Assembly: GCF_001194135.2 (NCBI RefSeq)
Contig: NC_069002.1
Span: 9,196,118 to 9,232,038 of the forward strand
Source of the DNA: Octopus bimaculoides
Taxonomy: Eukaryota
Direction: 5' to 3'
Length of the DNA: 35,921 nt
The notes beneath the pieces are model-generated. The model saw nothing but the letters and a program-made list of their open reading frames with translations. It ran no database searches and had not been told where the DNA came from. Each line of letters opens with the position of its first letter. Positions within the stretch are counted from its first letter, which is position 1. Below, piece by piece: positions 2,765-34,670 of the stretch. A program made the translations under genes and the position numbers.

Positions 2765-3230
2765 ATGGCCCCAAAATTTGTGGATTTCAGCAGTGATTCA
2801 AACACAAAACCTTCTCAGGCCATGAGAGAAGCCATGGCCAATGCTGAATCAGGAAGCGATCCAATGGTTTTTGGTAAAGTTTTGGCTATATTTGTTGATT
2901 TTTTAATTTTTAAATTATTATAAAGCTGCAACAGCATATCATCATCGTTGTCATTGTCATTGTCATCATCATCACTATCATCATCATCATTATCATCGTC
3001 ATTATTAAACATCCGTTTTCCATGCTTTCATGGGTCACATGGAACTTGTTAAAGCAGAATTTATACAGACGGATGCCTTTTCTGTCACAGACCCTCAGCT
3101 GTTTTCATACAAAGTAATATTTTCCCATGGCCAGACATGCCTTTTTATGGAAGACTAGAAACCAGCAACTTGGCTTATATGTCGGTGATGCTTGCTCATT
3201 TACAATCATAATGTGATGTTTAGACAAGGG

Positions 3231-3277
<47 letters not shown>

Positions 3278-5792
3278 GCATATTCACACATACACACACC
3301 TATACGCACACATGCACATATACACACTTGCAGAAAACAGCACTGCTTGAAACCGCTCAAATATTTTAAATGGTGCTTGAAAAATAAGGAGTGTTACCTT
3401 AGTTCACTGGTAGTGAACAGCTGACACCGTAGTACATCTCTAGCATTAGAAGCTGTGCAAAGACAATAAAATAATAATAATAATAATCTTTTTTACCAAG
3501 ACAAAACAATGTACATGATAACACTTCCAATCATTTAAGATCAAAAGCCATGAGAGCAAATGCCTGGTACTGCATCAGGGTATATAGCAATAATAATAAT
3601 AATAAAGCTGAAGCGAAGATCAAATATATAGTGGATGTGTTTATTTGGTAACAGATGATCTTCCCTTAAAATAACAATATTGGTTCCAACACATGATTTG
3701 ACATGAAGGTTCTTGCAAAACAAAAACATACTCTTTTACTCTCTCTTTTACTTGTTTCAGTCATTTGACTGTGGCCATGCTGGAGCACCGAATGTTATAT
3801 TTATATAATTTTCTTGATAATTTTCAGCGTTAGAAACAAAATGTGCAGAACTTCTTGGCAAAGAAAAAGCATTATTTATTCCAACGGCAACAATGGGAAA
3901 TCTATTGAGCAGTGAGTTATTTGCAAAATCTTTTATTTGGCTGTTTTGGAGAAGTTTTTCTGGTTATGAATGTGACTTTTGACTTCGTTAATCTTTTACT
4001 CGTTTCAGTTGGTGGAGTGTGGCCATACTGGAACATGCCTTGAAGGGCTGAGTTGAACAAAATCGCCCCTCTCCCATTTTTATTTGCTAAATCTGGTACT
4101 CATTCTATTGATTATTTGATAGAATGGGGGGATAGGGTGTAGGAGAGGGGAGGTGTCATTTTCATGTTAGGGGGTGAGAAGAATACTATGAAAGTCAGGG
4201 TTTGGGCAGGTTCCTGCACAGAGATCTGCATGGCTACTTACATCAAATAGGGGGAAAGGATGGGGGAAAGAAAGATTAAAATTACCATTAGGGGCTGCAA
4301 GACAGCCAATGGTGATAAGGTGAAACCAATATATATATGTGCCCCAGCATCAATATGGTGCCCCAGCATGGCCACAGTCTAATGACTCGAACAAAGGCAT
4401 GGCTTTGTGGTAAGAATCTTGCTTCTTAATCACATGAGACTGCACCCAGAACCATGTGGTTAGGAAGCGAACTTCTTACCACACAGCCACTCCTGCACCT
4501 ATTTCATCAATGTCAAAAATTAACTGAAAGAGTAAAGACAAGAATGGTGGGAAAATAGTTGAACATCAAATATAATGATCAATGGCTGATGTAGGCAGAA
4601 CAGATCATCATCACCACCATTTAGCATCTGTTTTCCATACTGACATAGGTTGAACTGATTGACAAAGTCCAACAAACTACAGAATAGTTTCTACAGCTTG
4701 ATGCCCTCCCTAAAACCAAACACTTTCCAGTATGTACTGGCTCCTTTTTCATGACACCAGCACTAGTGAGGTGACCAAGTAGCTTGCAAGACAATAAAAA
4801 GAAAAGAAACAGAAAAGGCCCTCTCAACTGAGCGGTGAGTCTACCTGAGAGAAGGGGAAGTGGTGGCTTTATACCAGGTGTTGAAGGCTACAACTGCAAT
4901 TTTACTTGGCTTGATGGGTCTTCTTCTCAAGCGCGGCATAATGCCTCCATGAGGCCGAAACTGATTATATTAATATGAATATGTAAAATAACGGGTGAAA
5001 CATGTAGGATGTTTAATATGGTTATAGTTAGGAAACATGTAGACAAAAGCTGACTTTGAAGAAAATGAAAAGATTATTTTTCTTTGTACATGTTTTGTAA
5101 ACGAAGTGTTTATCTTCTTTTGAATCTCTTTCACAGTCATGAGTCACTGTCCGGAGAGAGGACTGGAGATTATAATAGGAGATAAGTCTCATATTTGTTT
5201 ATCTGAACATGGCAATGTTGCTCAAGTAAGTAGCTTACTATGTCAATGTTTATATATGCAAGGGCGGTAAGCTGCCAGAGTCGTTAGCACGCTGGGTGAA
5301 ATGCTTAGTGGTATTTCGTCTGCTGTTATGTTCTGAGTTCAAATTCTGCCGAGGTCGACTTTGCTTTCATCCTTTTGGGGTCAATAAATTAAGTACCAGT
5401 TGCATACTGGGTCGATCTAATCATCTGTACCCCTCCCCCAAAAATTTTAGACCTTGTGCCTAAAGTAGAAAAGATTATTATTATTATTATTATTATTATT
5501 TCTTTACTGCCCACAAGGGGCTACACACGGATGGGACAAACAAGGACAAACAAACGGATTAAGTCGATTATATCGACCCCAGTGTGTAACTGGTACTTAT
5601 TTAATCGACCCCGAGAGGATGAAAGGCAAAGTCGACCTCGGCGGAATTTGAACTCAGAACATAGTGGCAGGCGAAATACCGCTAAGCATTTCGCCCGGCG
5701 TGCTAACGTTTCTGCTAGCTCGCCACCTTCATGGTAAAACGTACTAAAAGTATAGTAATTTAAATTTGACTTGCTATACTTTTAGTAATTTT

Positions 5793-5823
<31 letters not shown>

Positions 5824-9400: not shown

Positions 9401-9836
9401 AGACCATGAAACTTCACTAAGCGAAGTAGAACAGAATGAAACAAAGAGTTTAGCTAAAAAACACCTAAGTCCCACCTTGTCTGCGAATTGAATTTCTGTG
9501 CATACCCACAGCCAAAGCATTGGAGAGATAATTGCTAATTAGTGGTTCATTTTCTAGATTCGTTAAACCAAACCAATAAAGATACAACCCACAATTAAAA
9601 CTGACACTTAATTATTCGGTGGTCATAAGTGAAATTGTGATTAATTCTTATAATTAATTTTTTTTATAACCAGAGCCAAACCATGTCGTGCGGCCCTTGG
9701 GGGTGATGTCTTTAAACTGGGAATAGAGGCAGCTGCAGCGTTGTGTGGTTTAGAGAGACCAGAAGAAAACATTCAGAAGGACCATATTCTTGCAAAGAGA
9801 CTGGTCAATGGTAAATACACTCTATTGTCATTTGTT

Positions 9837-9868
<32 letters not shown>

Positions 9869-11333
9869 GGTGGTTCTAATTTGTCTATGATGATGATGAT
9901 GATGATGAGTAGATTTAGATTTTTGTAGTCATCAGGATATCATCCATCCAGCCAAGTCAAGTAGCTGGCCACAGACCAACGTAAACTTTCCACACAAGAG
10001 TGGCTCAATTGAGTGATAAGACATGGATGGCTGGCTTGGTCACATCAGTGAAATCTTTAACTTACACTATAATGCTTGATTAATTCAAAACAACAGGGAT
10101 TAATAAACATTACATTTGATCGAGTAATCCGAAGAATGCTAAAGGGATAAACCAGTCGTATCCAGCCCAGATATTCCACCTGTTTTATGCTACAGCTGGT
10201 CAGATCTAGCCTCTCATATCAAACCTACAGCATCGTCATTTTAAAACTAGACAATCACCTCATCAAAATCCCAAACCTACAAGATAATCCCTAATTAATC
10301 CAAAACAATGTGAATAAATAAGCATTACTTTTGACGAAGTAATCTGAAAGCTAAATGGTTGATTTATTTCATGAATTATTTCCATTATTTTTATTACTTA
10401 ATTAATAATCATTTTTTATTTAATTTTTTTAATTCGTGAATTGTTTCTCTTTTTCTCGGTTTCAGGTCTGAAAAATCTTTCTTCTTCAATGGTGACAATA
10501 GAGCCAGAGGAAGTCCAAACTAATCTCATTCTTATTAAAATCGATAAAGAAATGTCTTTCATCACAAACTTAAAAGAACGCTTAATGACGGTATGAAAAT
10601 AAATCCCTAATTTATTTATCCATTTCATTCTGCAGAAAGTAAAGCCACAAGTTTAAATAAAGTATTCATAAAGACAGAAAACTATTAATGAAACTAATAA
10701 CCTGGTATATAATGTACATATATTAATGTATACATACCTCTAATTGTAGTTCATCCTAAGCAAGAAACCTGTTCTCCACTGGCCCCTTCTTTCATATTTT
10801 TACCCAACTTTTACCCCCCCCCCATATCCAAGTATAATGTTACCTCTTTGGGGTTCTTAGTCTTGCAAGCTACATGGCAACCTCACTAGTGCTGGCGACA
10901 CAAGAATGCCAACCGCTTTATATGCTGTAAAGTAATTGGAATTAGGAAGGATAGAGAAACTATGCTGAAGCAGACACTGGAGGCAGGATACAGTCCTTGG
11001 ACCCAGCGGATTCTGTTAAACTATCCAACCCATGTATTTAATAATAATGATGATGAAAGCTATAGTGATACCGTAGATGGTGATGATCATTACAAATAAT
11101 AAGCCTTTCAATATATTTACTTCATTTCTGTTTTTTATCTTTTTTTTTTTATTTTCTTATTTTTTAAACAGACCACAGAAGCTGAAGTGAAGGAATTGGG
11201 TAAGGAAATCCATGTGGGTTGTAAACTTTTAGGTAAAGATATTCGGTTTGCAATTTGCTGTAATATAAACGAAGAAGACATAGATGATGCCATCAAGAAA
11301 GTCTGTTATGTTTTTAATGAAATTCATTTCTGA
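2765..11333 (+). CDS. THA1: Low-specificity L-threonine aldolase family paralog A (divergent copy), 9 coding exons, about 360 aa
   Basis: Exons: 2765-2873, 3828-3911, 5137-5225, 6652-6834, 7182-7289 (10-N gap inside), 8586-8641, 9674-9810, 10466-10590, 11172-11333 (TGA). All introns are GT-AG and phases match copy B. Motifs: LENTHNRCGG, HIDGARIWNA, CLNK|GIGAP (PLP Lys), QTNL, DIRF. No stop or frameshift in the sequenced part. Confidence 0.93.
5263..5727. mobile_element. Tail-to-tail pair of family A SINEs sharing an (ATT)n tract
   Basis: A + copy (5263-5500) and a - copy (5501-5727) share GTTAGCAC..GAAATGCTTAG..GTTCTGAGTTCAAATT..GAGGTCGACTTTGC. Other family A copies at about 13646-13760, 31470-31665 and 34264-34477 (all -). 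Confidence 0.85.
5845..6350. repeat. Purine-rich GGATGGAGAAGAGG-type low-complexity satellite spanning an assembly gap, followed by (GT)n-type microsatellite to about 6597
   Basis: Repeating GATGGA/GAGAAGAGGG units on both sides of N-run 6003-6289. Confidence 0.85.
7265..7274. other. Assembly gap inside THA1-A exon 5
   Basis: 10 Ns. By comparison with the 138-nt exon 5 of copy B, about 40 nt are missing. Other gaps: 6003-6289, 13126-13645, 22316-22644, 25596-26459, 27206-27219, 32585-32849. Confidence 0.9.
8062..8282 (-). mobile_element. Non-autonomous retroelement with (GAT)n tail, RTE-type 3' end (family D)
   Basis: (CAT)n-CGTTTAATGTCTGCCTTCCATGCTAGCATGGGTTGGACG...CTGGATGCCCTTCCT. Related copies at about 2940-3100, 4615-4700, 19725-19811, 20570-20770 and 29585-29770 (-), and 20934-21217, 28980-29160 and 32890-32946 (+). 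Confidence 0.8.
8297..8490 (+). mobile_element. Family C SINE 5' part (CORE-like CCTTGGGCAAGT block)
   Basis: GGAGTGGCTATGTGGTAAG head followed by CACCTTGGGCAAGTGTCTTCTA...GAAACTGAAAGAAG. The CORE assignment rests on a short motif resemblance only. Confidence 0.75.
8682..9027 (-). mobile_element. Family C SINE, inverted relative to 8297-8490
   Basis: 8926-9027 is the reverse complement of 8362-8463 with 11 mismatches in about 102 nt. It continues into the family C tail (GCTCCAGCATGGCCACAGTCAAATGACTGAAACA). Confidence 0.85.
9185..9415 (-). mobile_element. tRNA-head SINE with V-domain-like 3' module
   Basis: Head related to 82-172; body contains GATGGACTGGC...AAGGG and GCCATAGAAA. Related copy at about 11935-12155 (-). 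Confidence 0.65.
10056..10340 (+). mobile_element. Two tandem fragments of a piggyBac-type MITE family
   Basis: End motifs GCTAAAGGGATAA (10138-10149) and GCTAAATGGTTGA (about 10330-10341). The body aligns with 30570-30752. Confidence 0.55.
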
Positions 11334-12450: not shown

Positions 12451-12799
12451 TATATATACACATTTTTTTTATAGTTATCAGTTTATCAGCACTGTGCCCT
12501 TGGTACACTTTATCTTCTTGTTTTAATTGAACAAATTGGTTTTATCAAGAATAATAAACTACATTTGAATAATCTCTTGTTTCTTTTTTCTTCATTGTTA
12601 TAATTGATTAAGTAAATAAGTGACAGCATCATACAATTAAATGTCCTTCATTTCTGATGTTCTGTGAAAAACAAACATACCTGGTCATGAGGAAATATTA
12701 CCTTTCCTGGAAACAAGTGAGGGCTGGTGACCGGAAGAGCATCCAATCATAGAAAATTACATCTCGGCAAAAACCTGCTAAAACACATGAACCCACAGC

Positions 12800-13112
12800 G
12801 TGGCGCCTTGATCAAGTGTCTTCTACTATAGCCTCAGGCCAATCAAAGCCTTGCGAGTGGATTTAGTAGATGGAAACTGAAAGAAGCCTGTCGTATATAT
12901 GTGTATATGTATATATATATATATGTGTGTTTGTGTGTCTGTGTTTGTTCCCCCACCATCGCTTGACAACCGATGCTGGTGTGTTTACGTCCCCGTAACT
13001 TAGCGGTTCGGCAAAAGAGACCGGTAGAATAAGTACTAGGCTTCCAAAGAATAGGTCCTGGGGTCGATTTGCTCGATTAAAGGCGTCAAATGACTGAAAC
13101 AAGTAAAAGAGT
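12800..13112 (+). mobile_element. Family C SINE, near full length
   Basis: Core block, internal microsatellite, then ATCGCTTGACAACCGATGCTGG...ATGACTGAAACAAGTAAAAGAG tail. Other copies at about 14933-15297, 21244-21360 and 28490-28720 (+), and 3735-3790, 4345-4500, 18345-18425 and 19220-19353 (-). Confidence 0.8.
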
Positions 13113-13909: not shown

Positions 13910-15841
13910 TCCTCCACCCTAGTCACTTGATAACTGGTGTTGTTTTGTTTACATCCCCGTATCTTAGTGGTTCGCTAAAAGCGACTAATAAGTACCAGAC
14001 TTCAAAAATAAATCAAATTAAATAAGCAAGTACTGGAATGATGCATATGACAGGTCATGGAAACCTTTTTAACCCGTCGAAATAGTCTTACCAGAGGCGG
14101 GCCGTGTATGAGATAAAATATGCAGGGTTAAAGGTCAAAGCTTTGCTTTCTTGTCTGTCTAGTCTAAGATAGGCTTTTGTGATTGTTTTAATTATTTTAT
14201 TACGCCCACTCACGCACATACGCCTATTAACACGTACACATGCATAGAGTAAAAGGTCAAAGTATATACGCGCGCGCGCGTGTGTGTGTATGCATGTATG
14301 TATGTACGTATGTATTATATATTACATACACCTTCATAGATAGATACACACGCGCGCACGCATATTAAAACAAGGGAGGTTACTCTAAAGTAATTTTTCA
14401 ACATATTTGAATCATCCTTTTGTCATTGTTTTTATTGCTTCTGTCTCAGGTAAGAATTTTGTTTTTGTTTTCTTTTGGTACTTGTGATTGTTTATTTTAA
14501 TGCATACATACACACACACATATAAAATAATGGATGTCTTAATACAGAAATACTTGAAATCCTTAAGGTTTTTTTTACAAACTTTATCACGCTTATGTGG
14601 TTTGAAGATTTCTTCGTTCCACGTCGATCCTGACACGCGGGATCTTCAACAAATGTCTTTTTATTCTTCGAAGACCTCCACCAAAGAATATACACATGTC
14701 TTGAAATATTCATTCCATCCGAGTTTGCACGGGTAATCTTTCAGAAATTTAGTGAACCGTTATGTAACGCAAGGCTTTATGTATCGTTACGGTTATTTGG
14801 CTCCGTTAGAACCGATTGCCTAAGATATTTACAGTTCACAAAATGCAGAATATAATTCTTTTTTTTTTTTCCTTAAAAAATAGTTTCTCATTAGAAAACT
14901 TCCCATTTAATTACACGAAATAATATTGATGTGTTTACCCAGGCTTGGCTGTGTGGTAAGCAGAATGCCTCCTCACCATATTGTCTTGGGTTCAAACCCT
15001 TTGCAAACACCCTGGCCGAGTCTTCCACTACAGCTCTGTGCCGACCAAAGCCTTTTGAGTGGATTTGGTAGACGGAAACTAAGGGAGTCCAAGTGTGTGT
15101 ATGTGTGTGACTACCGCTTGGCAACCGGTGTTTGTTTGTTTACGCCCCTATGCCTTAGTGGTTTCGGCAAAATGAGACCGATAGAATTAGCAACAAACTT
15201 AAAAATAAATACTGGAGTCGATTTGTGCAACTAAACCTTTCGAGGAGGTACCTGAGCATGGTTGCAGTCAAAAGACTGAAACAAGCAAAAGATAGAAGAT
15301 ATGATCATTAACGCAAATAAATTATTAGTGGTGGTCACAACTGGATTTACCGCCAAGTATAGCTGCAATAGGTTAAGAAGGAACTTTTTGTTGAAATTCT
15401 AGAATAACACAAAAGACACAAAACAATGAAGATGAACTTTTTGGAGCAAAATAATTTGGTGAACTTTGGGAATAGCTATCTCGAATAAAATGACGAAAGA
15501 ATAAATTCGTTTCAATCGTGGAAGCTACCTCGAAGGTACGATCGGGACAGGTGAGATATTTAAAAAAACATGGAAGCACATCTACACTAGTGTACCCTCC
15601 CACAACTTTGTTTCCTCATAACATTCTGAAAAATGAGTATTTTTTTTTAAGAGGTTTTCTTCAAATATCTCTCAGAGGATGTAGATTACGACTATATAGA
15701 AATTTACTGTAAAAAAAATTCTTTTAATTAAAAAAAATAATAAATTGTACACGTACGTACTGACATATATATCTACAAAATGAAACTTGATATTTTGAGA
15801 AAAATGAGATGTCAGTCGGTATGTATATATGTACGCCTACC

Positions 15842-15873
<32 letters not shown>

Positions 15874-16136
15874 CACTACATTCCAATAATTGTAATTTAC
15901 AACATCTGAAAACTATTTCTAGAAAATTTTCCTTTAAAAATAACTATTTTTCTAAATTTTATGAGGGAGCAGAGTCAGAATCCAGACACACTTATACAGA
16001 GATCCTAACATGGATTTTTAAAAAGGATTTTCTTTTAAGTAATTTTCAAGTGTTTTTTTTTTGTTTGTTTTTTTTTTGTTTTTTTGCAATGTGGGATACA
16101 GATCTGTTTCAAGTCCATTAAGTTACTGCTGCAGTG

Positions 16137-19100
16137 ATGGCCCCAACAATTGTGGATTTGAGAAGTGATACAGTCACAAAACCTTCCCAGGCCATGAGAG
16201 AGGTCATTGCAAATGCTGAAGTGGGAGACGATGTTTTAAGAGAAGATCCAACTATCTTAGGTAATATTTAGGTCATTGACTTTCCTTTCTTGTAATAATA
16301 GTAGCAACATGCATATTTAAATAACAGTTACACACACACGCACATACATTCACACTGTCATACAGACAAACATAACCATGTGTGTGAAGTTTCTAACTGC
16401 CGACAAGGCATATCTGAAGCTTTCATCTTTCCTTAAGGTATAGAAACCAAATAGCAGCCACTGAAGCTATGCCACTGAAAATTTCCTTCTTCTCATCAGT
16501 TTCAAAAGCCTCAGGGTTGCCACCATCAATATCAAAAGAGCACTATAAAATGTATATAAAAATGCAATTTTTATAATTTCAGCCTTAGAAGAAAAATGTG
16601 CAAAACTTCTTGGCAAAGAAAAGGCCTTGTTTGTTCCTTCTGGGACCATGGCAAATTTATTAAGCAGTAAGTTATTACGTAATGTTTTATTTGGACTTTA
16701 TTTGTATTCATTGTCTTTCAATATGAGTCAGTTTGTCATGGATACTAACAACATAATGTATTTAGTCAATCTCAACTATTTTTATTACCTTCTGGCTCTC
16801 TTTTGTAGATATTCTTGAAGTATAGTCACTAATCTAAAACTTACTTTTAATTATATTAGAACTTTTAATTATATTAGAACTTTTAATTATATTTATTTTC
16901 TAAGTTCCAAGGTACATCTGTGAGATATACCTTGGAAGTAAGATCTAGTTGATGGCATCTTTGTACAGAATATTGATTGCATTTACAATGATATCAAAGA
17001 TACCAAATTCTCTGTGAATCTGCTACAATTTGAGTCAGTGGGATTAGCCAAAAAAGCTTTGAGCATCAAATATGATAATCCTTGGCTGATGTACGCGAGG
17101 GTAGCTATCTTTGTTAATATGGATATGTAACATAATGGGTGAGGTATGTTGAATGTTTGACATGGTTATATTCAAGAAAGAGGAAGACTAAAGATGAATT
17201 TGAAAAAACATTGAAAGAGTTATCTATATTTTTGTATATTTCTTTCTTTCTGTAAAGTACCATATTTTCTCATGTATAAATCCTACTTGTTTTATACGTG
17301 ATTGTAACTTAAAAAACTGGGTGAAACTTATATATGAAGCAAGACTGATATCAAGTTTGAGTATGAAGGGAAAAGATTTTGTGTCAAGATTTAATACTAA
17401 AGTAAGGTTGTGACTTCTACATTCATAAATACAGTAGTTATTTTGAATTTTTATTCACCAGATTGGCATTTAATGCTGCAAAATCAGTTGTAGAGATGTG
17501 AAATTTTGAATAAATGTAGCTTTCTCTTCTTCCATAATCTATATTTGTATTTTATGGATATTGCTGCTAATGCACCAACTTCTTAGAATTATGCTTAAGT
17601 ATCGTGAGCCCTCTTCCGAGGTACTCATGCATAAATCACTCGGATTTCTCCTTAATTTTAACTGAAAAGTCTAGGGTGCAGCTTATATATGAAGCAAGGC
17701 TGATATCAAGTTGGAATATGAAGGGAAACAAATTTTGTACCAAGATTTAACACTAAATTAGGCGTGTGATTTATGCATGGAGTAAATAAGGTATTTAATT
17801 TCTTTTAAAATCCTTTAACAGCTATGAGTCACTGTCATGAAAGAGGTTTGGAAATTATAATTGGAGATCAAGCTCATGTTGGTATTTATGAACAAGGCAA
17901 TGTTGCACAAGTAAGTAGCTTACCCATTGCTTTGTGTGTGTGTGCACACCTGCACATGTGTATATTTACATATATACACTACTACTACCTCTAATACTAC
18001 TACTATCACCACCACTTCTACTGCTACTACCATCATCACGACTACTACCACCACCACTACCACCTTGTTGCTACATCACAGTTTTTTCCCATGCACTGTT
18101 TTCCTGAGCTTCCACTGACCACTCCCTTGTGTTCTTCTCCTTCCCATCCATTTTCACATTTATTCTTTCACATCAGGCATTCACCCCTTCCTCCATTCCA
18201 TGATTTGTTATTGGAATATTTAAATACTTTGCTATATTTAAGGGAACATTTCAATGTAAGATTGGTTCTACAATTTAATAAATTTAATTTTGAAGTAATT
18301 ATATAATACATTCCTCTAGGCAAAGATCACGTTTAAGATTGCCCTAAGTGACACGCAATGGTACTGAACTAAAGACTATATGGTTGGAAAGCAAGCTTTC
18401 CCTCAACCACATAGCCATACCTGCACGCATATTATAAATATGTAAATTTAGAATTATGCTCTTCACAGATTGCTGGAGTATTTGCAAGAATCATCCCCAA
18501 CCAGAAAGATGGAACTCTTGATCTTGCTACAATTGCCAAGACAATATCAACAGGAGGTGACGCCCACCTCTGTAAAACGAAAGTTATCTACCTGGAAACT
18601 ACTCATAATAGATGTGGAGGGAAAATATTACCTTTAGATTATCTACAAAAGGTAAGAGCAATTTTGTAAATTCATTTTATTCATCATTTGTATTAGATCT
18701 GTGAAGAGGCGGGTATTCATAAGTGTAGCTGGATCGGTGTGAAGACAGAATGAGACAATTTGGCACTGTTGGTGTTTAAAAACTTGGAATTAAACTACAA
18801 AAAAGGTAAAGCAAAATTATCAACTGTATTCTCTATTTTAACAGTTTAATAATTTATATTTTCCCAGGTGTATAATTTAGCACAGGAAAATGGTATCAAG
18901 GTGCATATAGATGGTGCACGCCTTATGAATGCAGCTGTTGGTCTCGGTGTTCCTGCTTCTGAAATAACAAAATACTGTGATTCTGTCAGCTTGTGTTTCA
19001 GTAAAGTAAGATATATGTTTGATGTTAACATAGTTAGGTGCAGGGGTGGCTTCCTGAACACATGATTCCGGGTTCAGTCCCACTGCGGGGCACATTGGGC

Positions 19101-20899
19101 AAGTGTCTTCTACTACAAGGTTTTTATTTCATGCTGACCATTTGATAAAATCATTAAAGTCATTTTATCCTTAATTCTATAAAGAATAAATATATATATG
19201 TGTGTGTGTGTGTGTGTATATATCAGCCCAAGACTATAGTAGAAGACACTTGCTAAAGATGCCATGCTGTGGGGCTGAACCAGAAACCAGTGGGAATGAA
19301 CTCAGTATTACATGGTTGCAAAGCAAGCTTCTTAACCAGACAGCCATGCTTGCACTTTATGTATATTTCCAGAATATTTAATTTTTGGTTTAATACGATT
19401 TTTCTAAATTTATTTCTAAATCTAAAAAATATTCATTTCATTATCAATCCATTTCTGTGTTTCTAATATCTGTAAAAAATGTTCTTCAAACTATCTTCAG
19501 GGAATTGGGGCTCCAGTTGGGTCAGTTTTAGCTGGTACTGAATCTTTCATCACAAGGTTTGTATCAAGTGATATTACTATTTATTTCATATTGTAACATG
19601 TTAACAAATTCTTCCAGGATTAAAAAAAAATTTTGATTTAACAGAAAGTACAAGAACATTGGATTAAATATCTCCATCTTGCACAAACAGTTGTGATTGC
19701 TTCCTCTGAGGAAACTTCATCATCCTCATCATCATCGTTTAACATCCATTTTCAATGGGTTGGACGATTTGACTGAGGACTGGTGAACCAGATGGCTGCA
19801 CCAGGCTCCAATTCAGTTGTCTTAATGAAATTATAATTAATTATATTTATTTCTTTTTTCTTGTTATCAGGGCCTTAAGAAGCCGTAAAGCTCTCGGAGG
19901 TGGAATGAGACAAGCAGGAATATTGGCTGCTGCTGCCATATATGGTTTAGACAGAGTTCAAGAAACCATTACAAGAGACCATGCTCATGCAAAGAAATTG
20001 GTCAATGGTAAATACATTTAATTATTATGATGCTTTGTATTTGGAAAAGTTGATTCCATGTCTCACCCAGAGACCTCAAGAGATAACAAGTTAGAAGTTC
20101 AAGTTGGTGTTATGATTAGGGTGCCATATATTTGGTTTATATGTGGTTGGGAAGAAAGCTTCTAACCACACTGCTATTCATGCGCCTATTTTATTTTATA
20201 AAATTTAATTATTTGATGAAATAATACTGAAATAATTATTTAATTAAAAATTAACTATTTTTTTATTTCATTTTGTGAATTGTTTCTCATTTTGTTGATT
20301 TCAGGTCTGAAAAATCTTTCTTCTTCGGCGGTGAAAGTAGAACCGGAAGAAGTCCAAACTAACATCATGTTTATTGAGATCAATAAAGACATTGCCTTCA
20401 TTTCTGATTTAATTAAACGTTTAATGACGGTATGAAAGCTATTCCCTAATTTATTTATCCATTTCACTCTGCAAACAGTCACCAGTTTAAATATGAATAT
20501 TTATAAAGAGAGAAAACTAAGAGTACCATAACCTGGTATATAGATTTGATATATTAATGTATGTATCATAATCATCATCTAACGTCTGCTTTCCATGCTG
20601 GCATGGGTTAGACGGTTTGATTGAAACTAGTAAACTGGGGAGCCTCACCAGATTCCAATCTGATTTGGTATGGTTTCTACAGATGAATGCCCTTCCTGAC
20701 ACCAACCACTCCAAGAGTGTTTAGGGGTGGTTTTTTACATACTGCCAGCATGGGTCCCAGTTATGTGACATTGGCATCAGCCACAACTATGATTTCACTT
20801 GGCTTGACGAATCTTCTTAAGCACAGCATATCGCCAAAGGCCTCGGTCACTTATTGCTTCCGTGAGGCCCAATGTTCAAAGATCATGTATATGTACACA

Positions 20900-20934
<35 letters not shown>

Positions 20935-21983
20935 CGAGCGAGATCGTTGCCAGTGCCCCTGGACTGGCTTGTGCGGGTGGCACATAAAAGACACCATTTC
21001 GAGCGTGTCCGTTTTCGTGCGGGTGACACGTAAAAGCACCCACTACACTCTCTGAGTGGTTGGCGTTAGGAAGGGCATCCAGCTGTAGAAACTCTGCCAA
21101 ATCAGACTGGAGCCTGGTGTTGCCATCCGGTTTCACCAGTCCTCAGTCAAATCGTCCAACCCATGCTAGCATGGAAAGCGGACGTTAAACGATGATGATG
21201 ATGATGATGATGATGATATATATATATAAATACATATGATGTAGGCACAGGCATGGCTGCATGGTAAGAAGTTTGCTTACCAACTACATGGTTCCAGCTT
21301 CAGTTCCACTGTGTCTTTTACTATAGCCTTGGGCCAACCAAAACCTTGTGAGTGGTGTCGGTGGTGGTGGTGGTGGCAGTGGCGGCGGCCGTCGTCGTCG
21401 TCTCTGATTAAGAAGACCTGTGGTCAGTGGGGGGTCCCTACTATGACCACCTCGTTTATCTCTATATCAGGGCCTATCTTTCAAATATTTTCTTACAACC
21501 ACAACAAAGCCACTACCATCATCATCACAACTATCACCAGTACCAATCAAAGGACCCTGTATGCGGTTTCTCAACCTTGCTAGAAACAACAGTAAATGTC
21601 CCTCAAATTGCACACAACCATTCTAAATAAGAATATAGGCCCTGATAAGAGAAAAACGAGATGGTTGTGAGCAGGAAATCCCTAGATCATAGGTCTGCTC
21701 AACCAGGATTGATCCAATGTGCTAAACATAAGCAGTGATTAGTTTTGATATATATTTGTTGTTTATTTATAATATTTTTTGTAAAAACGTTTATAGTATA
21801 TTTTGCTTTTTTTTTCAACAGACCACTGATGATGAAGTAAAGGAGCTAGGGAAGGAGATCCATGTGCGTTGTGCAAATATGGGCCAGAGGATTCGACTTG
21901 TAACTAATTGGAATCTAAGTGAACAAGACATAGATGATGCCATCAAGAAACTGTGTTATGTTTTCAGTGAAAAAAACCTGTAA
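16137..21983 (+). CDS. THA1: Low-specificity L-threonine aldolase family paralog B (near-canonical copy), 9 coding exons, 365 aa
   Basis: Exons: 16137-16260, 16583-16666, 17822-17910, 18469-18651, 18868-19005, 19501-19556, 19871-20007, 20305-20429, 21822-21983 (TAA); 1098 nt, all GT-AG. Family motifs: [54 protein letters not shown]|[25 protein letters not shown]. Confidence 0.96.
16843..16892. repeat. 18-bp tandem repeat x2.8
   Basis: Unit ACTTTTAATTATATTAGA. Confidence 0.85.
17258..17793 (+). mobile_element. Two copies of a pogo/Tigger-like MITE (about 17258-17436 and 17600-17793) in THA1-B intron 2
   Basis: Shared core CTTATATATGAAGCAAG(A/G)CTGATATCAAGTT. Degenerate ends TACCATATTTTCTCATGTATAA / TTCTACATTCATAAATACAGTA and ...ATGCATGGAGTAAATAAGGTA. 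Confidence 0.6.
20934..21217 (+). mobile_element. Family D element with (GAT)n tail, inverted to the copy at 20570-20770
   Basis: Ends GCATGGAAAGCGGACGTTAAAC(GAT)n. The reverse complement aligns to 20575-20740. Confidence 0.82.
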
Positions 21984-24484: not shown

Positions 24485-25288
24485 ATGGTGACTCTGAAAG
24501 AGATTGTAACTATGTATCAGAATTTAAAGAGGGAATGGGACAAAAAACCTCCCAATTTAGACAATTGTGGACAGCTGCTATCTAAATTAAAGATTGCTCT
24601 GACCAGTGTGACGTTTTTACCGACGGACGAAGCTGAACCTTCCAAACAAGAGCTATTAGTCGCACGAGACATTCTGGAAATTGGAGCCCAATGGAGCATC
24701 CTTCGGCAAGACATCCCAGCTTTCCAACGTTATATGGCTCAATTGAAGTGTTATTATATGGACTATAAAGACAACCTGCCAGATTCTAATTACAAATACC
24801 AGTTACTTGGTTTGAATTTACTTTGTTTGTTGTCGCAGAACCGTCTTGCCGAGTTCCACACCGAATTGGAACTCCTACCTGTGAAAGACATCCAAAATAA
24901 TATCTACATTAAACACCCTGTCTCTATCGAGCAATACCTGATGGAAGGATGTTACAACAAAGTTTTTATAGGTAAAGACTCCGTACCGGCCGAAAGCTAT
25001 AATTTCTTCATGAACATTCTGCTAAATACAATTCGAGACGAGATTGCTGCTTGTATAGAGAAGGCCTACGACAAGTTGGCCCTCAACGAAGCTGCTCGGA
25101 TGTTGTTTTTCGAGAGTCAAGTGCCCATCCGTGAATATGCTCGCCAGAGAAACTGGATTCTGTCCAAAGACAGTTATTTCAACTTCAACATTGTCGATTC
25201 TCAGAAGGACACTGAAGATGTTATCCCTGCCAAGGAACTTGCTAAACAAACCATCGACTACGCACGGGAGTTGGAAATGATCGTTTAA
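24485..25288 (+). CDS. PSMD8: 26S proteasome non-ATPase regulatory subunit 8 (Rpn12), single exon, 267 aa
   Basis: Continuous ORF with recognisable Rpn12 sequence ([82 protein letters not shown]). The ATG at 24485 has good context (caagATGG) and matches the family N-terminus. The upstream ATG at 24395 only adds non-homologous residues. Confidence 0.96.
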
Positions 25289-28207: not shown

Positions 28208-28683
28208 CACAGAGGAGATGACCAACAGACCAAGATGTCTTGAGAAGACCCACTCACCTCAACAAATTGCATTTTGAAAAGGGATGTAACTTTTCAATAT
28301 ATGATGCATGGATGCCACAGAAATATACCCTGTGTATCACAGGATAGACAGAGCAATCAATCAAACAGCAATTTTTTTAATTTAAAAATAGGATTTTATT
28401 AAAATAATGGCTGAGACCAGTTTTACAGAAGGAAGTCATATGTTTTTTTGTTTTTTTTTCTTTCTTTTTATAGATGATCAATATATACATACACACAACA
28501 GCATGGTTGTTTGTTGTGATTAAGAAATTTACTTTCCAAGTATGTGGTTTTTCAATTCAGTCCCACTGTGTGGCACTTTGGGCAAGTGCTGTCTTCTGTA
28601 GCTTCAGGCCAACCAAATCCTTTTGAATGGATTTAGTAGACAGAAACTGAAAGAAGCTCATCGTGTATGTATGTATGTATATG

Positions 28684-28718
<35 letters not shown>

Positions 28719-31203: not shown

Positions 31204-32371
31204 ACCTCAGGATTTCTAAAAAAAGAATGAAATAGTGCTATAGATAACCACGAAGAAGTAATTTTGAAGACCTCATAATGGGTAAGTAGCAAAAATTTTA
31301 ATATGTGTATTCTATGCATCTTTATTTGTCAATTTCAAATTTCAAGGCTCTAATCCTACCAGGTTACAAAGAAATGATTATCTCCCTTGTATTAACTGTC
31401 TACTAGAGGGCACCATGTGTTTTAAAAGTAACTTCTGCTTGAAAAGATACGGCACAATATTGGCTTTGACTTTTGGGCACAAGGCCAGCAATTTCAGGGA
31501 GGGGATAAGTCGATTACATCAACCCCAGTGTTCAACTGGTACTTGTTTTAATGACCCCGAAAGGATAAAAGGCAGAGTCAACCTCAGGAGAATTTGAACT
31601 CAGAAAGTAAAGACAGGCAAAATGCCATTAAGTATTTTGCCTGGCCTGCTAACAATTCTGCCAGCAGAAACAGCAATATTAAAATGACTATTTCTAGGAT
31701 TTATTACAGATTATTATTGTTTTTTGTTTTGTTGTACAGTGTATCACAGGTACCTCAGTGTTTAATATTTTTTTTTTATAGAATACATGAACATTTCACC
31801 TCTCTTCTGCTTGCTTTCTTTTTTTTTTCTTTTCTTTTCTTTCATACATACATACAAGACAAGTAATGAAAATAGAAATTTATTTATTCATTTTCTAAAA
31901 TAAAAACTAAAAAAAAAAGTATTCAGAGGAAAAAAAGAAAAACAGTCGTAAATGAACAAAGAATTAAATAAGCAGAACAGGGAGGCTGATGGGGCAACAG
32001 ACTGCAATGAAATGAGTTGGCATTTTCACCCTTCTAAAGTCAGTAAATTTATAGACTGAGACGATTCTATTACGACATTGATGATTTGACATGACTGACT
32101 GGACATCGAAGCTGTTTTGGCAACAGCACTCTTTGGCACTAGAGAGGCAAATTTGATGCAGTCACACAAATATATACATACAGATAGGAAGTGTAAGAGA
32201 ATGAGATATTCCAATACAGGTACAAAACCAACTTTACAGACATTAATGGTTCTGGAACCTTTTATAATCCTCACTACCTGTACCTGCATTGCATTTAACG
32301 TCTATTTTTCCATGCTTAATCATTTCAGTAAATTTGATATTTAATTTTTTAAACGAATTAATATGTAAGAC

Positions 32372-32885: not shown

Positions 32886-34670
32886 TCTGTGTCAAATCAT
32901 CCAACCCATGCCAGTATGAAAAACGGATGTTAAACAATGATGATGTTGAATGTTTAATTAAGTAAATTTAATATTTAATTTAGAGCGTGTTGATCTACCT
33001 TGGTTCTGAAAAATCAGTTATCTGTAAAGGCTTTGATACCAAAGATTCCAGAAAATCAAAGTTATATCTGTATGTTAATTAAACATGATTGACATAAGCA
33101 CTTTCTTCTCCTCAAACACATAAATTAAAATATACACACACACATAAACCGAATAAGGTGGGGAGGGAAGAGGAGAATGAGAGATACATTAAAAGGTCAG
33201 ATGTCCAAATAAGTTGGTGTCAAACCAGCAACACTATAATAGCTGTGCCAAAACATATCCATAAATTTAGAAGCAATTATATATTGGAGGTTAATCTAAT
33301 TAAATTTAGGTTTTTTTAAGTTAGAAATTGTTATTTATTATTATTATTATTGCATGAGACACACATTAACCATGAATATTTAGCACTGAACATATGGTGA
33401 TGAACCTAACTCTATAACCATAATATTGTGACTGTTGTGCCTCTGAGCAAGGAACAGATTCTGCTTGATTGACAAAATATACTCCTACTTCAGAGATGAG
33501 TGATAAACAACAGGAAAAAAAAAATGGTTCTAACAAAGAATTATTTAAACTCTCCTGGCATGACTGATCATTATTGCAAAATATATCTACATCCATTCTC
33601 TGAACCATGAACATGACATCATTTTTGCCAGACTGACAAAATATATTCCTACTTCACACAAGAAAATAGTAATGGCTCTGCCAAAAAATATTCTATCCAA
33701 GCATGACTGATATCATTATCATCATTTAACAAGATTTGATGACAAATCTGCCAGCTCACCACCTTAATAATAATGATAATAATAATAATAATAATAATAA
33801 TAATGGAATGTGTTGTTTAAAACTAATGCTAACAGGTTTAAATTTCCGTAAGATTTTACTATTATTTTACTTGCGCTGTTTTATCAAGCATTCATCACTG
33901 GAAAAATTGTTGTTATAAATATGTACAAGGAGAAATTTCTTTTTGCAGACAGCTTGATGTTTCTCTGTTATTAACTGTGAAGTAGGTTAGTTGTCAGGTA
34001 AAGCGGATTAAGGTAGAGTCACCTGACTCAACAAGCATATTTAAACTCAGAACTACACAAAAATATTTTGGGTGTTGTTCCAAATGAAATACTAACCCCA
34101 CTACCATCACCACATAAAAAATATAATTTATAGCAATTAATGACATAATTATTAGCAATTTATATTAATTGAAATTCATGTAAATAATACCAAATACCAA
34201 AATTTAAATGTAATTAAAAGAAGAAAAATTTGTTTTAAAATGGAAATAATAATAATAATAATAACGATTTCAAATTTTGGCACAATGCCAGCAATTTTGG
34301 GGAAGGGATTAAGTCAATTACATCGACCCCAGTGCATAACTGGTACTTATTTTATCGACCGTGAAAGGATGAAAGGCAAAGTCGACCTCAGCGGAATTTG
34401 AACTCAGAATGCAAAGACAGATGAAATGTCACTAAGCACTTTGCTCGGATCGATAACGTTTCTGCCAGCTCGCCGTCTTGAAAATATTAATTAATAATGA
34501 TAATGAAGATAAAAACGTGATAAAATATCACCAGTGTGTTGATTAACCAAACATTTTGTTTATATTTCACACCAGATTCGAACTGTTAAATACAGTTAAA
34601 CAGAGTGTTAAACACAAGCAACACAACTAAAAATATTAGCATGTAGAAATATATATATATATATATATAT

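What the first reader, a model, noticed from the sequence alone, without database searches (positions are those of the whole stretch)
2765..11333. Threonine-aldolase tandem duplicate with an intact gene but a rebuilt active site (candidate new enzyme or pseudoenzyme)
Seen: copy A keeps all 9 exons, GT-AG sites and the frame, yet changes cluster in the catalytic pocket. E. coli LtaE numbering is recalled from memory. Changed: DLRSDTVT to DFSSDSNT; the V29-D33 loop is deleted; G58 to A (PTAT); aromatic 87 to S (HICLSE vs HVGIYE); H126 to G (SGGTGNSK vs GGDAHLCK); CFSK to CLNK; PVGS to PFGA; K222 to A; GGGMRQ (R229) to GGDVFK; RLVT to RFAI. Retained: S6-D7, T59, H83, ENTHN, D166, R169, K197 and R308. 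Established: H83/H126 act in aldol cleavage, residue 87 affects stereospecificity, and K222/R229 come from the neighbouring subunit near the PLP. Inference: the Schiff-base and carboxylate anchors are kept while the side-chain and phosphate sites are replaced. That fits a changed substrate or reaction (e.g. other beta-hydroxy amino acids; this family includes hydroxytrimethyllysine aldolases of carnitine synthesis) or a non-catalytic role (cephalopod enzyme-crystallins are a precedent).
Basis: partly seen in the sequence, partly recalled or inferred. Interest (0 to 1): 0.82.

Follow-up and report, generated by a model that had tools for sequence, protein, structure and literature searches.

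The report
Divergent octopus threonine-aldolase paralogue
This Octopus bimaculoides gene is a copy of the vitamin-B6 enzyme threonine aldolase from an old, octopus-only side-branch that selection has kept intact while its cofactor and substrate pocket was remodelled, so it is probably a working enzyme with a changed job, not a dead copy.

Summary
Copy A (2765-11333, + strand) has 9 exons with GT-AG introns and the same phases as canonical copy B (16137-21983). Every listed substitution is present, checked against verified E. coli LtaE numbering.

Three corrections:
- A is not fully readable. The 10-N gap at 7265-7274 hides about 40 nt of exon 5. The 287-N gap lies in a minisatellite in intron 3.
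- A and B are not a simple recent pair. The window is O. bimaculoides chromosome CM046622.1, which carries an array C2-C1-A-B. A belongs to a divergent subfamily shared with O. sinensis and Argonauta hians.
- Changes do not cluster at conserved sites overall. Changes at invariant sites sit in the N-terminal strand, the 26-35 loop, S196 and 219-230.

A against its O. sinensis orthologue gives dN/dS 0.20 (p = 2e-10), similar to B. The Schiff-base lysine, D166, H83, R169, R308, S6 and T59 are invariant in all 8 divergent sequences. The orthologue models at pLDDT 94, with TM 0.95 to mouse Tha1.

Best reading: a selectively maintained PLP enzyme with an altered pocket. The substrate is unknown, and expression in O. 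bimaculoides is untested. NCBI never annotated A because a chimeric model (LOC106874140) spans it.

The parts
2765..2873 (+). Copy A exon 1 (ATG; DFSSDSNT; 5-residue loop deletion)
   Evidence: orthologous exon of 109 nt in O. sinensis
3828..3911 (+). Copy A exon 2 (PTATMGN; G58A, T59 kept)
5137..5225 (+). Copy A exon 3 (H83 kept, Y87S)
6003..6289 (.). Assembly gap (287 N) inside intron 3 of copy A, within a 17/34-nt minisatellite; non-coding
6652..6834 (+). Copy A exon 4 (H126G loop SGGTGNSK; ENTHN kept)
7182..7289 (+). Copy A exon 5, incomplete (D166, R169; then CLNK with S196N and Schiff-base Lys at 7287-7289)
7265..7274 (.). Assembly gap (10 N) inside exon 5; about 40 nt (13 codons) missing by comparison with all other copies
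8586..8641 (+). Copy A exon 6 (GIGAPFGA)
9674..9810 (+). Copy A exon 7 (K222A, G227D, R229F, Q230K: RAALGGDVFK)
10466..10590 (+). Copy A exon 8
11172..11333 (+). Copy A exon 9 with stop (R308 kept, RFAI). It is the only divergent-type exon 9 sequenced in this assembly and is borrowed by NCBI model LOC106874140
16137..21983 (+). Copy B, canonical threonine aldolase, identical to XP_014777251.1 (LOC106874147). Exons 16137-16260, 16583-16666, 17822-17910, 18469-18651, 18868-19005, 19501-19556, 19871-20007, 20305-20429, 21822-21983

Best explanation
Copy A is a functional, selectively maintained member of an octopod-specific divergent subfamily of the L-threonine aldolase / Tha1 (HTML aldolase) family, which has the fold-type I PLP fold.

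Shown:
- The gene structure is canonical.
- There is a syntenic, full-length orthologue in O. sinensis.
- The recent branch is under purifying selection, after about 2.4-fold accelerated protein change following the split from the canonical copy.
- All residues that hold PLP in cis and bind the alpha-carboxylate are invariant across the subfamily: K197, D166, H83, R169, T59, S6, R308.

Inferred:
- It still forms an internal aldimine with PLP and acts on an alpha-amino acid.
- The pocket wall built from the neighbouring subunits and the phosphate site have been rebuilt. The changes are S196N, G227D/E, loss of R229, loss of the 27-31 loop, loss of H126 and Y87 to a small residue; in the A lineage also K222A, with a new K230.
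- Substrate range, kinetics or reaction type therefore differ from the canonical copy B.

The substrate is unknown.
For: - Gene model and splice sites.
- The window is O. bimaculoides CM046622.1 and B is XP_014777251.1.
- Orthologue P0001 in O. sinensis has identical exon lengths and alignable introns (83-92% identity).
- dN/dS A vs orthologue is 0.20-0.26, with 39 of 229 synonymous sites differing (Sd 39/229) and 31 of 809 nonsynonymous sites differing (Nd 31/809), Fisher p = 2e-10. B vs its orthologue is 0.24-0.35.
- Divergent-type copies in O. sinensis (P0003, P0123) and Argonauta (P0008, P0012) share the loop deletion, CLNK and GG[EDQ].
- Of 49 columns that are >=98% conserved in 224 canonical TAs, 36 are kept in all divergent members, including every core PLP and carboxylate residue.
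- Relative-rate test: 50 vs 21 unique changes, p = 6e-4.
- AF2 model of the orthologue: pLDDT 94.2, TM 0.95, rmsd 1.4 A to mouse Tha1 8PUM.
- S196N and R229H/C/S/T also occur in a few distant family members that keep K197, D166 and R169 (S196N with R229H in two of them).
- H126 and K222 mutants of E. coli TA remain active: PMC4761611, PMC6411801.
Against: - No transcript evidence for A in O. bimaculoides. A's exons 1-8 are in no annotated protein, and no matching RNA-derived protein was found.
- About 40 nt of exon 5 are unread and could hide a lesion.
- R229 and S196 are 100% conserved in 224 canonical TAs, and R229 and K222 are PLP ligands from the adjacent subunit in mouse Tha1 (PMC11016064). 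PLP binding may therefore be weakened.
- The loop that held H126 differs at 5 of 8 residues between the two A orthologues, which suggests relaxed constraint there.
- Monophyly of the divergent clade has only 54.5% neighbour-joining (NJ) bootstrap support.
- There is no biochemistry.
Confidence: 0.6

Rival explanations
1. Same-reaction isozyme. A still cleaves threonine, allo-threonine or HTML like copy B. The array reflects dosage or tissue subfunctionalisation, and the pocket changes tune kinetics only.
For: - E. coli H126N/F, F87A/D and K222A variants stay active (PMC4761611, PMC6411801).
- All cis catalytic residues are retained.
- The fold is unchanged.
Against: - Columns that are invariant or nearly so (S196, G227, D28) are changed in every divergent member, and R229 in 7 of 8.
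- The protein evolved 2.4-fold faster after the duplication.
- A 5-residue loop that includes the position of mouse Tha1 substrate-site residue Tyr69 is removed (PMC11016064).
Confidence: 0.2
2. Non-catalytic pseudoenzyme or regulatory subunit. A has lost productive PLP chemistry and acts structurally, for example by co-assembling with canonical B, since the changes concentrate on residues donated in trans to a neighbour's active site.
For: - Loss of K222, R229 and the 27-31 loop, all of which are trans-acting elements (PMC11016064).
- The H126 loop is hypervariable.
- Purifying selection is compatible with any function.
Against: - K197, D166, H83, R169, R308, S6, T59, E88 and ENTH are invariant in all 8 divergent sequences from three species. 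That is not expected once catalysis is dispensable.
- S196N with R229H also occurs elsewhere in the family alongside intact catalytic residues.
Confidence: 0.12
3. In O. bimaculoides specifically, A is a silent or recently disabled copy, with the lesion hidden in the exon-5 gap or in regulatory DNA, even though the lineage was functional until recently.
For: - 40 nt of exon 5 are unread.
- A is not annotated as a protein in O. bimaculoides.
Against: - The missing annotation is explained by a chimeric NCBI model. C1 and C2 lack their own exon 9 because of assembly gaps and were joined to A's exon 9.
- There is no stop, frameshift or broken splice site in 1043 sequenced coding nt.
- dN/dS is 0.20.
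Confidence: 0.06

Closest known systems
Mouse Tha1 (L-threonine aldolase / hydroxytrimethyllysine aldolase), PDB 8PUM/8PUS
   Same: - Same Pfam family (PF01212).
- Best structural match to the model of A's orthologue (TM 0.95, rmsd 1.4 A).
- Same Schiff-base Lys, Asp, Arg, Thr and stacking His.
   Different: - Mouse Lys267 and Arg274, the PLP ligands from the adjacent subunit, correspond to Ala and Phe in A.
- The loop carrying mouse Tyr69 is shortened by 5 residues.
- The residue equivalent to mouse His169 is Gly.
- A has no N-terminal presequence.
E. coli low-specificity L-threonine aldolase LtaE (3WLX, 4LNJ)
   Same: Alignable end to end. S6, D7, T59, H83, E88, D166, R169, K197 and R308 are conserved.
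   Different: R5S, loop 27-31 deleted, G58A, F87S, H126G, S196N, K222A, G227D, R229F, Q230K, V310A.
Candida albicans HTMLA, a GLY1 (threonine aldolase) paralogue
   Same: A precedent for a lineage-specific duplicate of this family with a shifted substrate role (PMC11016064).
   Different: It is an independent fungal duplication. I did not check whether it shares any of the octopod substitutions, and its function there is known genetically.
Canonical octopod copy (window copy B; Argonauta P0007)
   Same: Same 9-exon structure and phases, 67% identity, adjacent on the chromosome.
   Different: B keeps the GDDVLREDP loop, H126, S196, K222, G227 and R229. The A lineage accumulated 2.4 times more unique changes.
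Cephalopod enzyme-crystallins (GST-derived S-crystallins, ALDH-derived omega-crystallin)
   Same: A taxon-level precedent for tandemly expanded enzyme paralogues recruited to non-catalytic roles. This comes from my own knowledge, not from a tool.
   Different: No evidence links this gene to the lens or to high expression, and the catalytic core is conserved rather than eroded.

Membership tests
L-threonine aldolase / Tha1 / GLY1 family (Pfam PF01212, fold-type I PLP) | Pfam Beta_elim_lyase domain above the gathering score | tested here: met
   A scores 242 bits (cut-off 27) and B 339 bits
L-threonine aldolase / Tha1 / GLY1 family (Pfam PF01212, fold-type I PLP) | Threonine-aldolase three-dimensional fold | tested here: met
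   AF2 model of orthologue P0001 (91% identical to A): pLDDT 94.2, TM 0.95 to 8PUM. A itself was not modelled because of the gap.
L-threonine aldolase / Tha1 / GLY1 family (Pfam PF01212, fold-type I PLP) | Schiff-base lysine (K197), D166 to the pyridine N, stacking H83, R169 | tested here: met
   Present in A (K201, D170, H83, R173) and in all 8 divergent sequences
L-threonine aldolase / Tha1 / GLY1 family (Pfam PF01212, fold-type I PLP) | Alpha-carboxylate anchors S6 and R308 | tested here: met
   S10 and R332 in A
L-threonine aldolase / Tha1 / GLY1 family (Pfam PF01212, fold-type I PLP) | PLP ligands donated by the adjacent subunit (K222, R229) and S196 next to the lysine | tested here: not met
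   K222A, R229F and S196N in A. S196 and R229 are 100% and K222 99% conserved in 224 canonical TAs. Their role is taken from mouse Tha1 (PMC11016064).
L-threonine aldolase / Tha1 / GLY1 family (Pfam PF01212, fold-type I PLP) | GDDV(Y/F)GEDP loop and water-coordinating H126 | tested here: not met
   Residues 27-31 are deleted and H126 is Gly
L-threonine aldolase / Tha1 / GLY1 family (Pfam PF01212, fold-type I PLP) | Retro-aldol cleavage of Thr, allo-Thr or HTML; homotetramer | not testable with these tools
   Needs expression and assay
Processed or unitary pseudogene | Stops, frameshifts or broken splice sites | tested here: not met
   None in the 1043 sequenced coding nt, and all introns are GT-AG. 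The 40 unread nt were not tested.
Processed or unitary pseudogene | Neutral evolution (dN/dS near 1) | tested here: not met
   0.20-0.26 vs the O. sinensis orthologue, p = 2e-10
Processed or unitary pseudogene | No transcript | not testable with these tools
   No RNA data could be reached. The NCBI model is confounded by assembly gaps.
Pseudoenzyme / enzyme-crystallin | Loss of the catalytic or cofactor-anchoring core | tested here: not met
   The core is invariant across the subfamily
Pseudoenzyme / enzyme-crystallin | Very high tissue-specific expression, or no PLP binding | not testable with these tools
   Needs expression data and biochemistry

The most novel reading that the evidence does not exclude
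Octopods evolved and expanded a private branch of the threonine/HTML aldolase family. In it the phosphate and trans-subunit wall of the active site was rebuilt (S196N, G227E/D, loss of R229, H126 and the 27-31 loop). This would give a PLP enzyme with a substrate or reaction not found in canonical members, and the A lineage would be a second-step variant (K222A, Q230K, R5S).
Probability: 0.35. Interest if true: 0.65.

Novelty: new variant of a known kind. Interest (0 to 1): 0.5.

Why it matters
[quoted passage not shown] Here an animal lineage keeps a canonical copy next to three or more divergent copies. These copies are under purifying selection and have replaced residues that are invariant in hundreds of homologues.

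This gives a natural experiment on how far the PLP-phosphate and inter-subunit part of a fold-type I active site can be rebuilt. It also gives a concrete candidate for a cephalopod-specific amino-acid reaction, and natural variants at positions that enzyme engineers already mutate (residue 87 and the loop just before H126).

There is a practical point too: the current O. bimaculoides annotation merges three genes into one chimeric model and omits copy A.

Tried and rejected
- A third protein search with the C-terminal half of A, meant to surface transcript fragments, returned an evidently incomplete list without even P0001. I discarded it.
- Literature searches for threonine aldolase with octopus or cephalopod terms found nothing relevant.
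- Exact-protein look-ups of P0002 and P0006 were not on record.
- The O. sinensis canonical locus covered only exons 1-6, so B's dN/dS uses 224 codons.
- A four-sequence MAFFT alignment of the exon-9 flanks wrongly suggested that the orthologous introns are unalignable. Pairwise blastn corrected this to 83-92% identity.
- The search of 1.84 billion cluster representatives found no further divergent-clade members outside octopods.
- The organism behind the Logan transcript P0126, the sister of all octopod copies, could not be identified.
- Young pseudogene: rejected on dN/dS and on the orthologue's intact structure.
- A third copy inside the window: rejected by tblastn.
- An exon hidden in the 287-N gap: rejected, because B and the orthologue have no exon there and the gap sits in a minisatellite.
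Full report
**What is in the sequence.** The window carries two + strand genes of the threonine-aldolase family.

Copy A has 9 exons: 2765-2873, 3828-3911, 5137-5225, 6652-6834, 7182-7289, 8586-8641, 9674-9810, 10466-10590 and 11172-11333. Copy B has 9 exons between 16137 and 21983. All 16 introns are GT..AG and the phases are the same in both copies. Exon lengths are identical except exon 1, where A is 15 nt shorter, and exon 5. tblastn finds no third copy in the window. Both proteins match Pfam PF01212, A at 242 bits and B at 339 bits.

**The assembly gaps.** The gap at 6003-6289 sits in intron 3 of A. The same 17/34-nt minisatellite lies on both sides. Neither B nor the orthologue has an exon there, so the gap is non-coding.

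The gap at 7265-7274 is inside exon 5. Exon 5 is 138 nt in B, in paralogue C2 and in the O. sinensis orthologue. In A, 83 nt and 15 nt are read on either side of the 10 N, so about 40 nt (13 codons) are missing. The left piece is in frame with the upstream exons. The right piece is CLNK, including the Schiff-base lysine codon at 7287-7289, and is in frame with the downstream exons. Whether the 40 missing nt are open cannot be known from this assembly.

**Where the window comes from, and why A is unannotated.** Copy B is identical to O. bimaculoides XP_014777251.1 (LOC106874147). The window matches GCA_001194135.2 chromosome CM046622.1 base for base, gaps included.

Upstream of the window lie two more divergent copies. 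C2 has exons 1-8, and C1 has exons 4-8. Their remaining exons fall in assembly gaps. NCBI's LOC106874140 is a 33-kb chimeric model that joins C2/C1 exons to A's exon 9, the only divergent-type exon 9 that was sequenced. A's exons 1-8 therefore lie in an 'intron' of that model and appear in no annotated protein. The lack of annotation is an assembly artefact and is not evidence against the gene. The array is C2-C1-A-B.

**Relatives.** O. sinensis has the same order on CM016880.1: P0003 (divergent), P0001 (orthologue of A) and P0009 (canonical). A further divergent copy, P0123, lies on an unplaced contig.

P0001 has exon lengths 109, 84, 89, 183, 138, 56, 137, 125 and 162. These equal A's once the gap is allowed for. 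Its introns align to A's at 83-92% identity. Protein identity of A to P0001 is 91%, against 67% for A to B.

Argonauta hians has two adjacent divergent copies (P0012, P0008) and a canonical one (P0007). All divergent copies share three features: a 5-6-residue deletion in the GDDVxxEDP loop, CLNK in place of CFSK/CLSK, and GG[E/D/Q] in place of GGG.

A neighbour-joining tree gives these supports:
- all octopod copies as one clade: 100%
- the A pair: 100%
- the C group: 100%
- the canonical pair: 70.5%
- the whole divergent clade: only 54.5%

The shared indel and signature residues are the stronger argument that the duplication predates the Octopus/Argonauta split. A search of representatives of 15 billion proteins found no member of this clade outside octopods. 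No paper on it was found.

**Selection.** A against its O. sinensis orthologue shows 39 synonymous differences over 229 sites and 31 nonsynonymous differences over 809 sites. dN/dS is 0.20 by the Nei-Gojobori method (NG86), and 0.21-0.26 by other methods. Fisher's p is 2e-10 against neutrality. B against its orthologue (exons 1-6) gives 0.24-0.35.

dS between A and B is 0.74-0.80, and between A and C2 it is 0.32. Outside the exons A and B share only dispersed repeats. The split is therefore old.

Tajima's relative-rate test shows 50 unique changes on A against 21 on B (p = 6e-4). The C and Argonauta divergent copies give similar ratios against their canonical partners. A and C do not differ from each other. 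The pattern is a burst of change after duplication, followed by constraint.

**Active-site accounting.** I verified my recalled E. coli LtaE sequence against PDB 3WLX. I then aligned it with 224 canonical homologues and the 8 divergent sequences.

Of 49 columns that are >=98% conserved in canonical enzymes, 36 are unchanged in every divergent member. These include S6, D7, N62, H83, E88, E136, T138, H164, D166, A168, R169, N172, K197, P202, G204, G225, G226, G232, D252, H253 and R308. T59 (96% conserved) is also unchanged in every member.

Changes across the subfamily:

| Position | Change | Extent |
|---|---|---|
| D28 | deleted | all members |
| S196 | to N | all members |
| G227 | to D/E/Q | all members |
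| R229 | lost | 7 of 8 |
| D27 | lost | 6 of 7 |
| H126 | lost | all members (Y in C2) |
| residue 87 | S/A/T/F | varies by copy |

Changes specific to the A lineage are K222A, Q230K and R219P/L. R5S is also seen in the O. sinensis C copies.

A differs from B at 18% of highly conserved columns, 32% of moderately conserved ones and 41% of variable ones. Change is therefore not enriched at conserved sites overall. The invariant positions that did change fall in four segments: 3-10, 26-35, 196 and 219-230.

In mouse Tha1 the PLP is held by Lys242, Asp211, Arg214 and Thr98 of its own chain, and by Lys267 and Arg274 of the adjacent chain. Tyr69 and Tyr168 from other chains line the substrate site (PMC11016064). 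These map to E. coli K197, D166, R169, T59, K222, R229, Y30 and the residue before H126. So the cis half of the site is kept, and the half contributed by neighbouring subunits, together with S196, is what changed.

Among more distant family representatives, S196N and R229H/C/S/T occur in a few sequences that keep K197, D166 and R169. In two of them S196N and R229H occur together. This suggests a tolerated alternative way of holding the phosphate.

**Structure.** An AlphaFold2 model of P0001 built on a 67-sequence alignment has mean pLDDT 94.2 and pTM 0.92. No segment falls below 50, including the shortened loop. Its best PDB match is mouse Tha1 8PUM at TM 0.95 and rmsd 1.4 A, followed by T. 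maritima, A. jandaei and E. coli threonine aldolases.

**Interpretation.**
- The young-pseudogene reading is rejected.
- A non-catalytic role is possible. It is disfavoured because every residue needed to bind PLP in cis and to anchor an alpha-carboxylate is invariant in three species and eight genes.
- Published mutagenesis shows that H126N/F, K222A and residue-87 variants of E. coli TA remain active (PMC4761611, PMC6411801).
- The most likely reading is a working PLP enzyme on an alpha-amino acid whose pocket, and probably substrate range or kinetics, differs from canonical copy B. B is the likely Thr/HTML aldolase.
- What the substrate is, whether PLP affinity is reduced, whether A co-assembles with B, and whether A is transcribed in O. 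bimaculoides all remain untested.

**Verdict.** A is not a lone rebuilt duplicate but one member of an old, expanded, octopod-specific subfamily under purifying selection, and it is mis-annotated in the current genome. I rate it a new variant of a known enzyme kind, of moderate interest.

Noticed in passing
window 11172-11333; L001 3049-3210 and 36405-36566: Exon 9 is 96-98% identical at the nucleotide level among O. bimaculoides A, O. sinensis A and the O. sinensis C paralogue. A is closer to the paralogue (98.1%) than to its own orthologue (96.3%), although whole-gene dS between the A orthologues is 0.19. This points to exon-limited gene conversion or nucleotide-level constraint.
   Followed up: partly
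L005 6001-39444 (window up to 11333): NCBI LOC106874140 (isoforms X1-X6) is a chimeric model over three tandem genes (C2, C1, A). C1 and C2 lack their own exon 9, and C1 its exons 1-3, because of assembly gaps. Isoforms mix exons of different copies and end on A's exon 9.
   Followed up: yes
window 24485-25288 (+): An intronless 267-aa ORF of the CSN8/PSMD8/eIF3K family (PF10075, E = 5e-33), called as a gene in the NCBI record. Being single-exon, it might be a retrocopy.
   Followed up: partly
window 18598-18600 (copy B, ETTHN): Canonical copy B has Thr at E. coli position N137, a column that is 99% Asn in 224 homologues. The O. sinensis canonical copy and all divergent copies keep Asn.
   Followed up: no
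window 5863-6343: A 17/34-nt G-rich minisatellite spans the 287-N gap in intron 3 of A and is followed by (TG)n and degenerate TG-rich repeats at 6372-6593.
   Followed up: yes
window 5553-5729, 31499-31675, 34303-34479; 8357-8489, 12792-12924, 28562-28694, 15020-15109: Two families of short dispersed repeats (about 130-180 nt, 73-88% identical) occur in introns of A and in intergenic DNA. Copies are also present in the O. sinensis locus. They look like SINE-type elements.
   Followed up: no
window 2748-2764 and 16120-16136: In both copies an AG lies a few bases upstream of the ATG (..TTCAG TCGTG ATG / ..CTGCAG TG ATG), and A/B similarity starts 17 nt upstream of the ATG. This suggests an unannotated non-coding 5' exon spliced just before the start codon.
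   Followed up: no
L006-L010 (Logan RNA-seq contigs SRR27666058 and others): P0126 is a canonical-type threonine aldolase transcript, 60% identical to B. It is the sister of all octopod copies (99.5% bootstrap). Its source organism is unknown, possibly another cephalopod. If so, the duplication is confined to the octopod lineage.
   Followed up: partly
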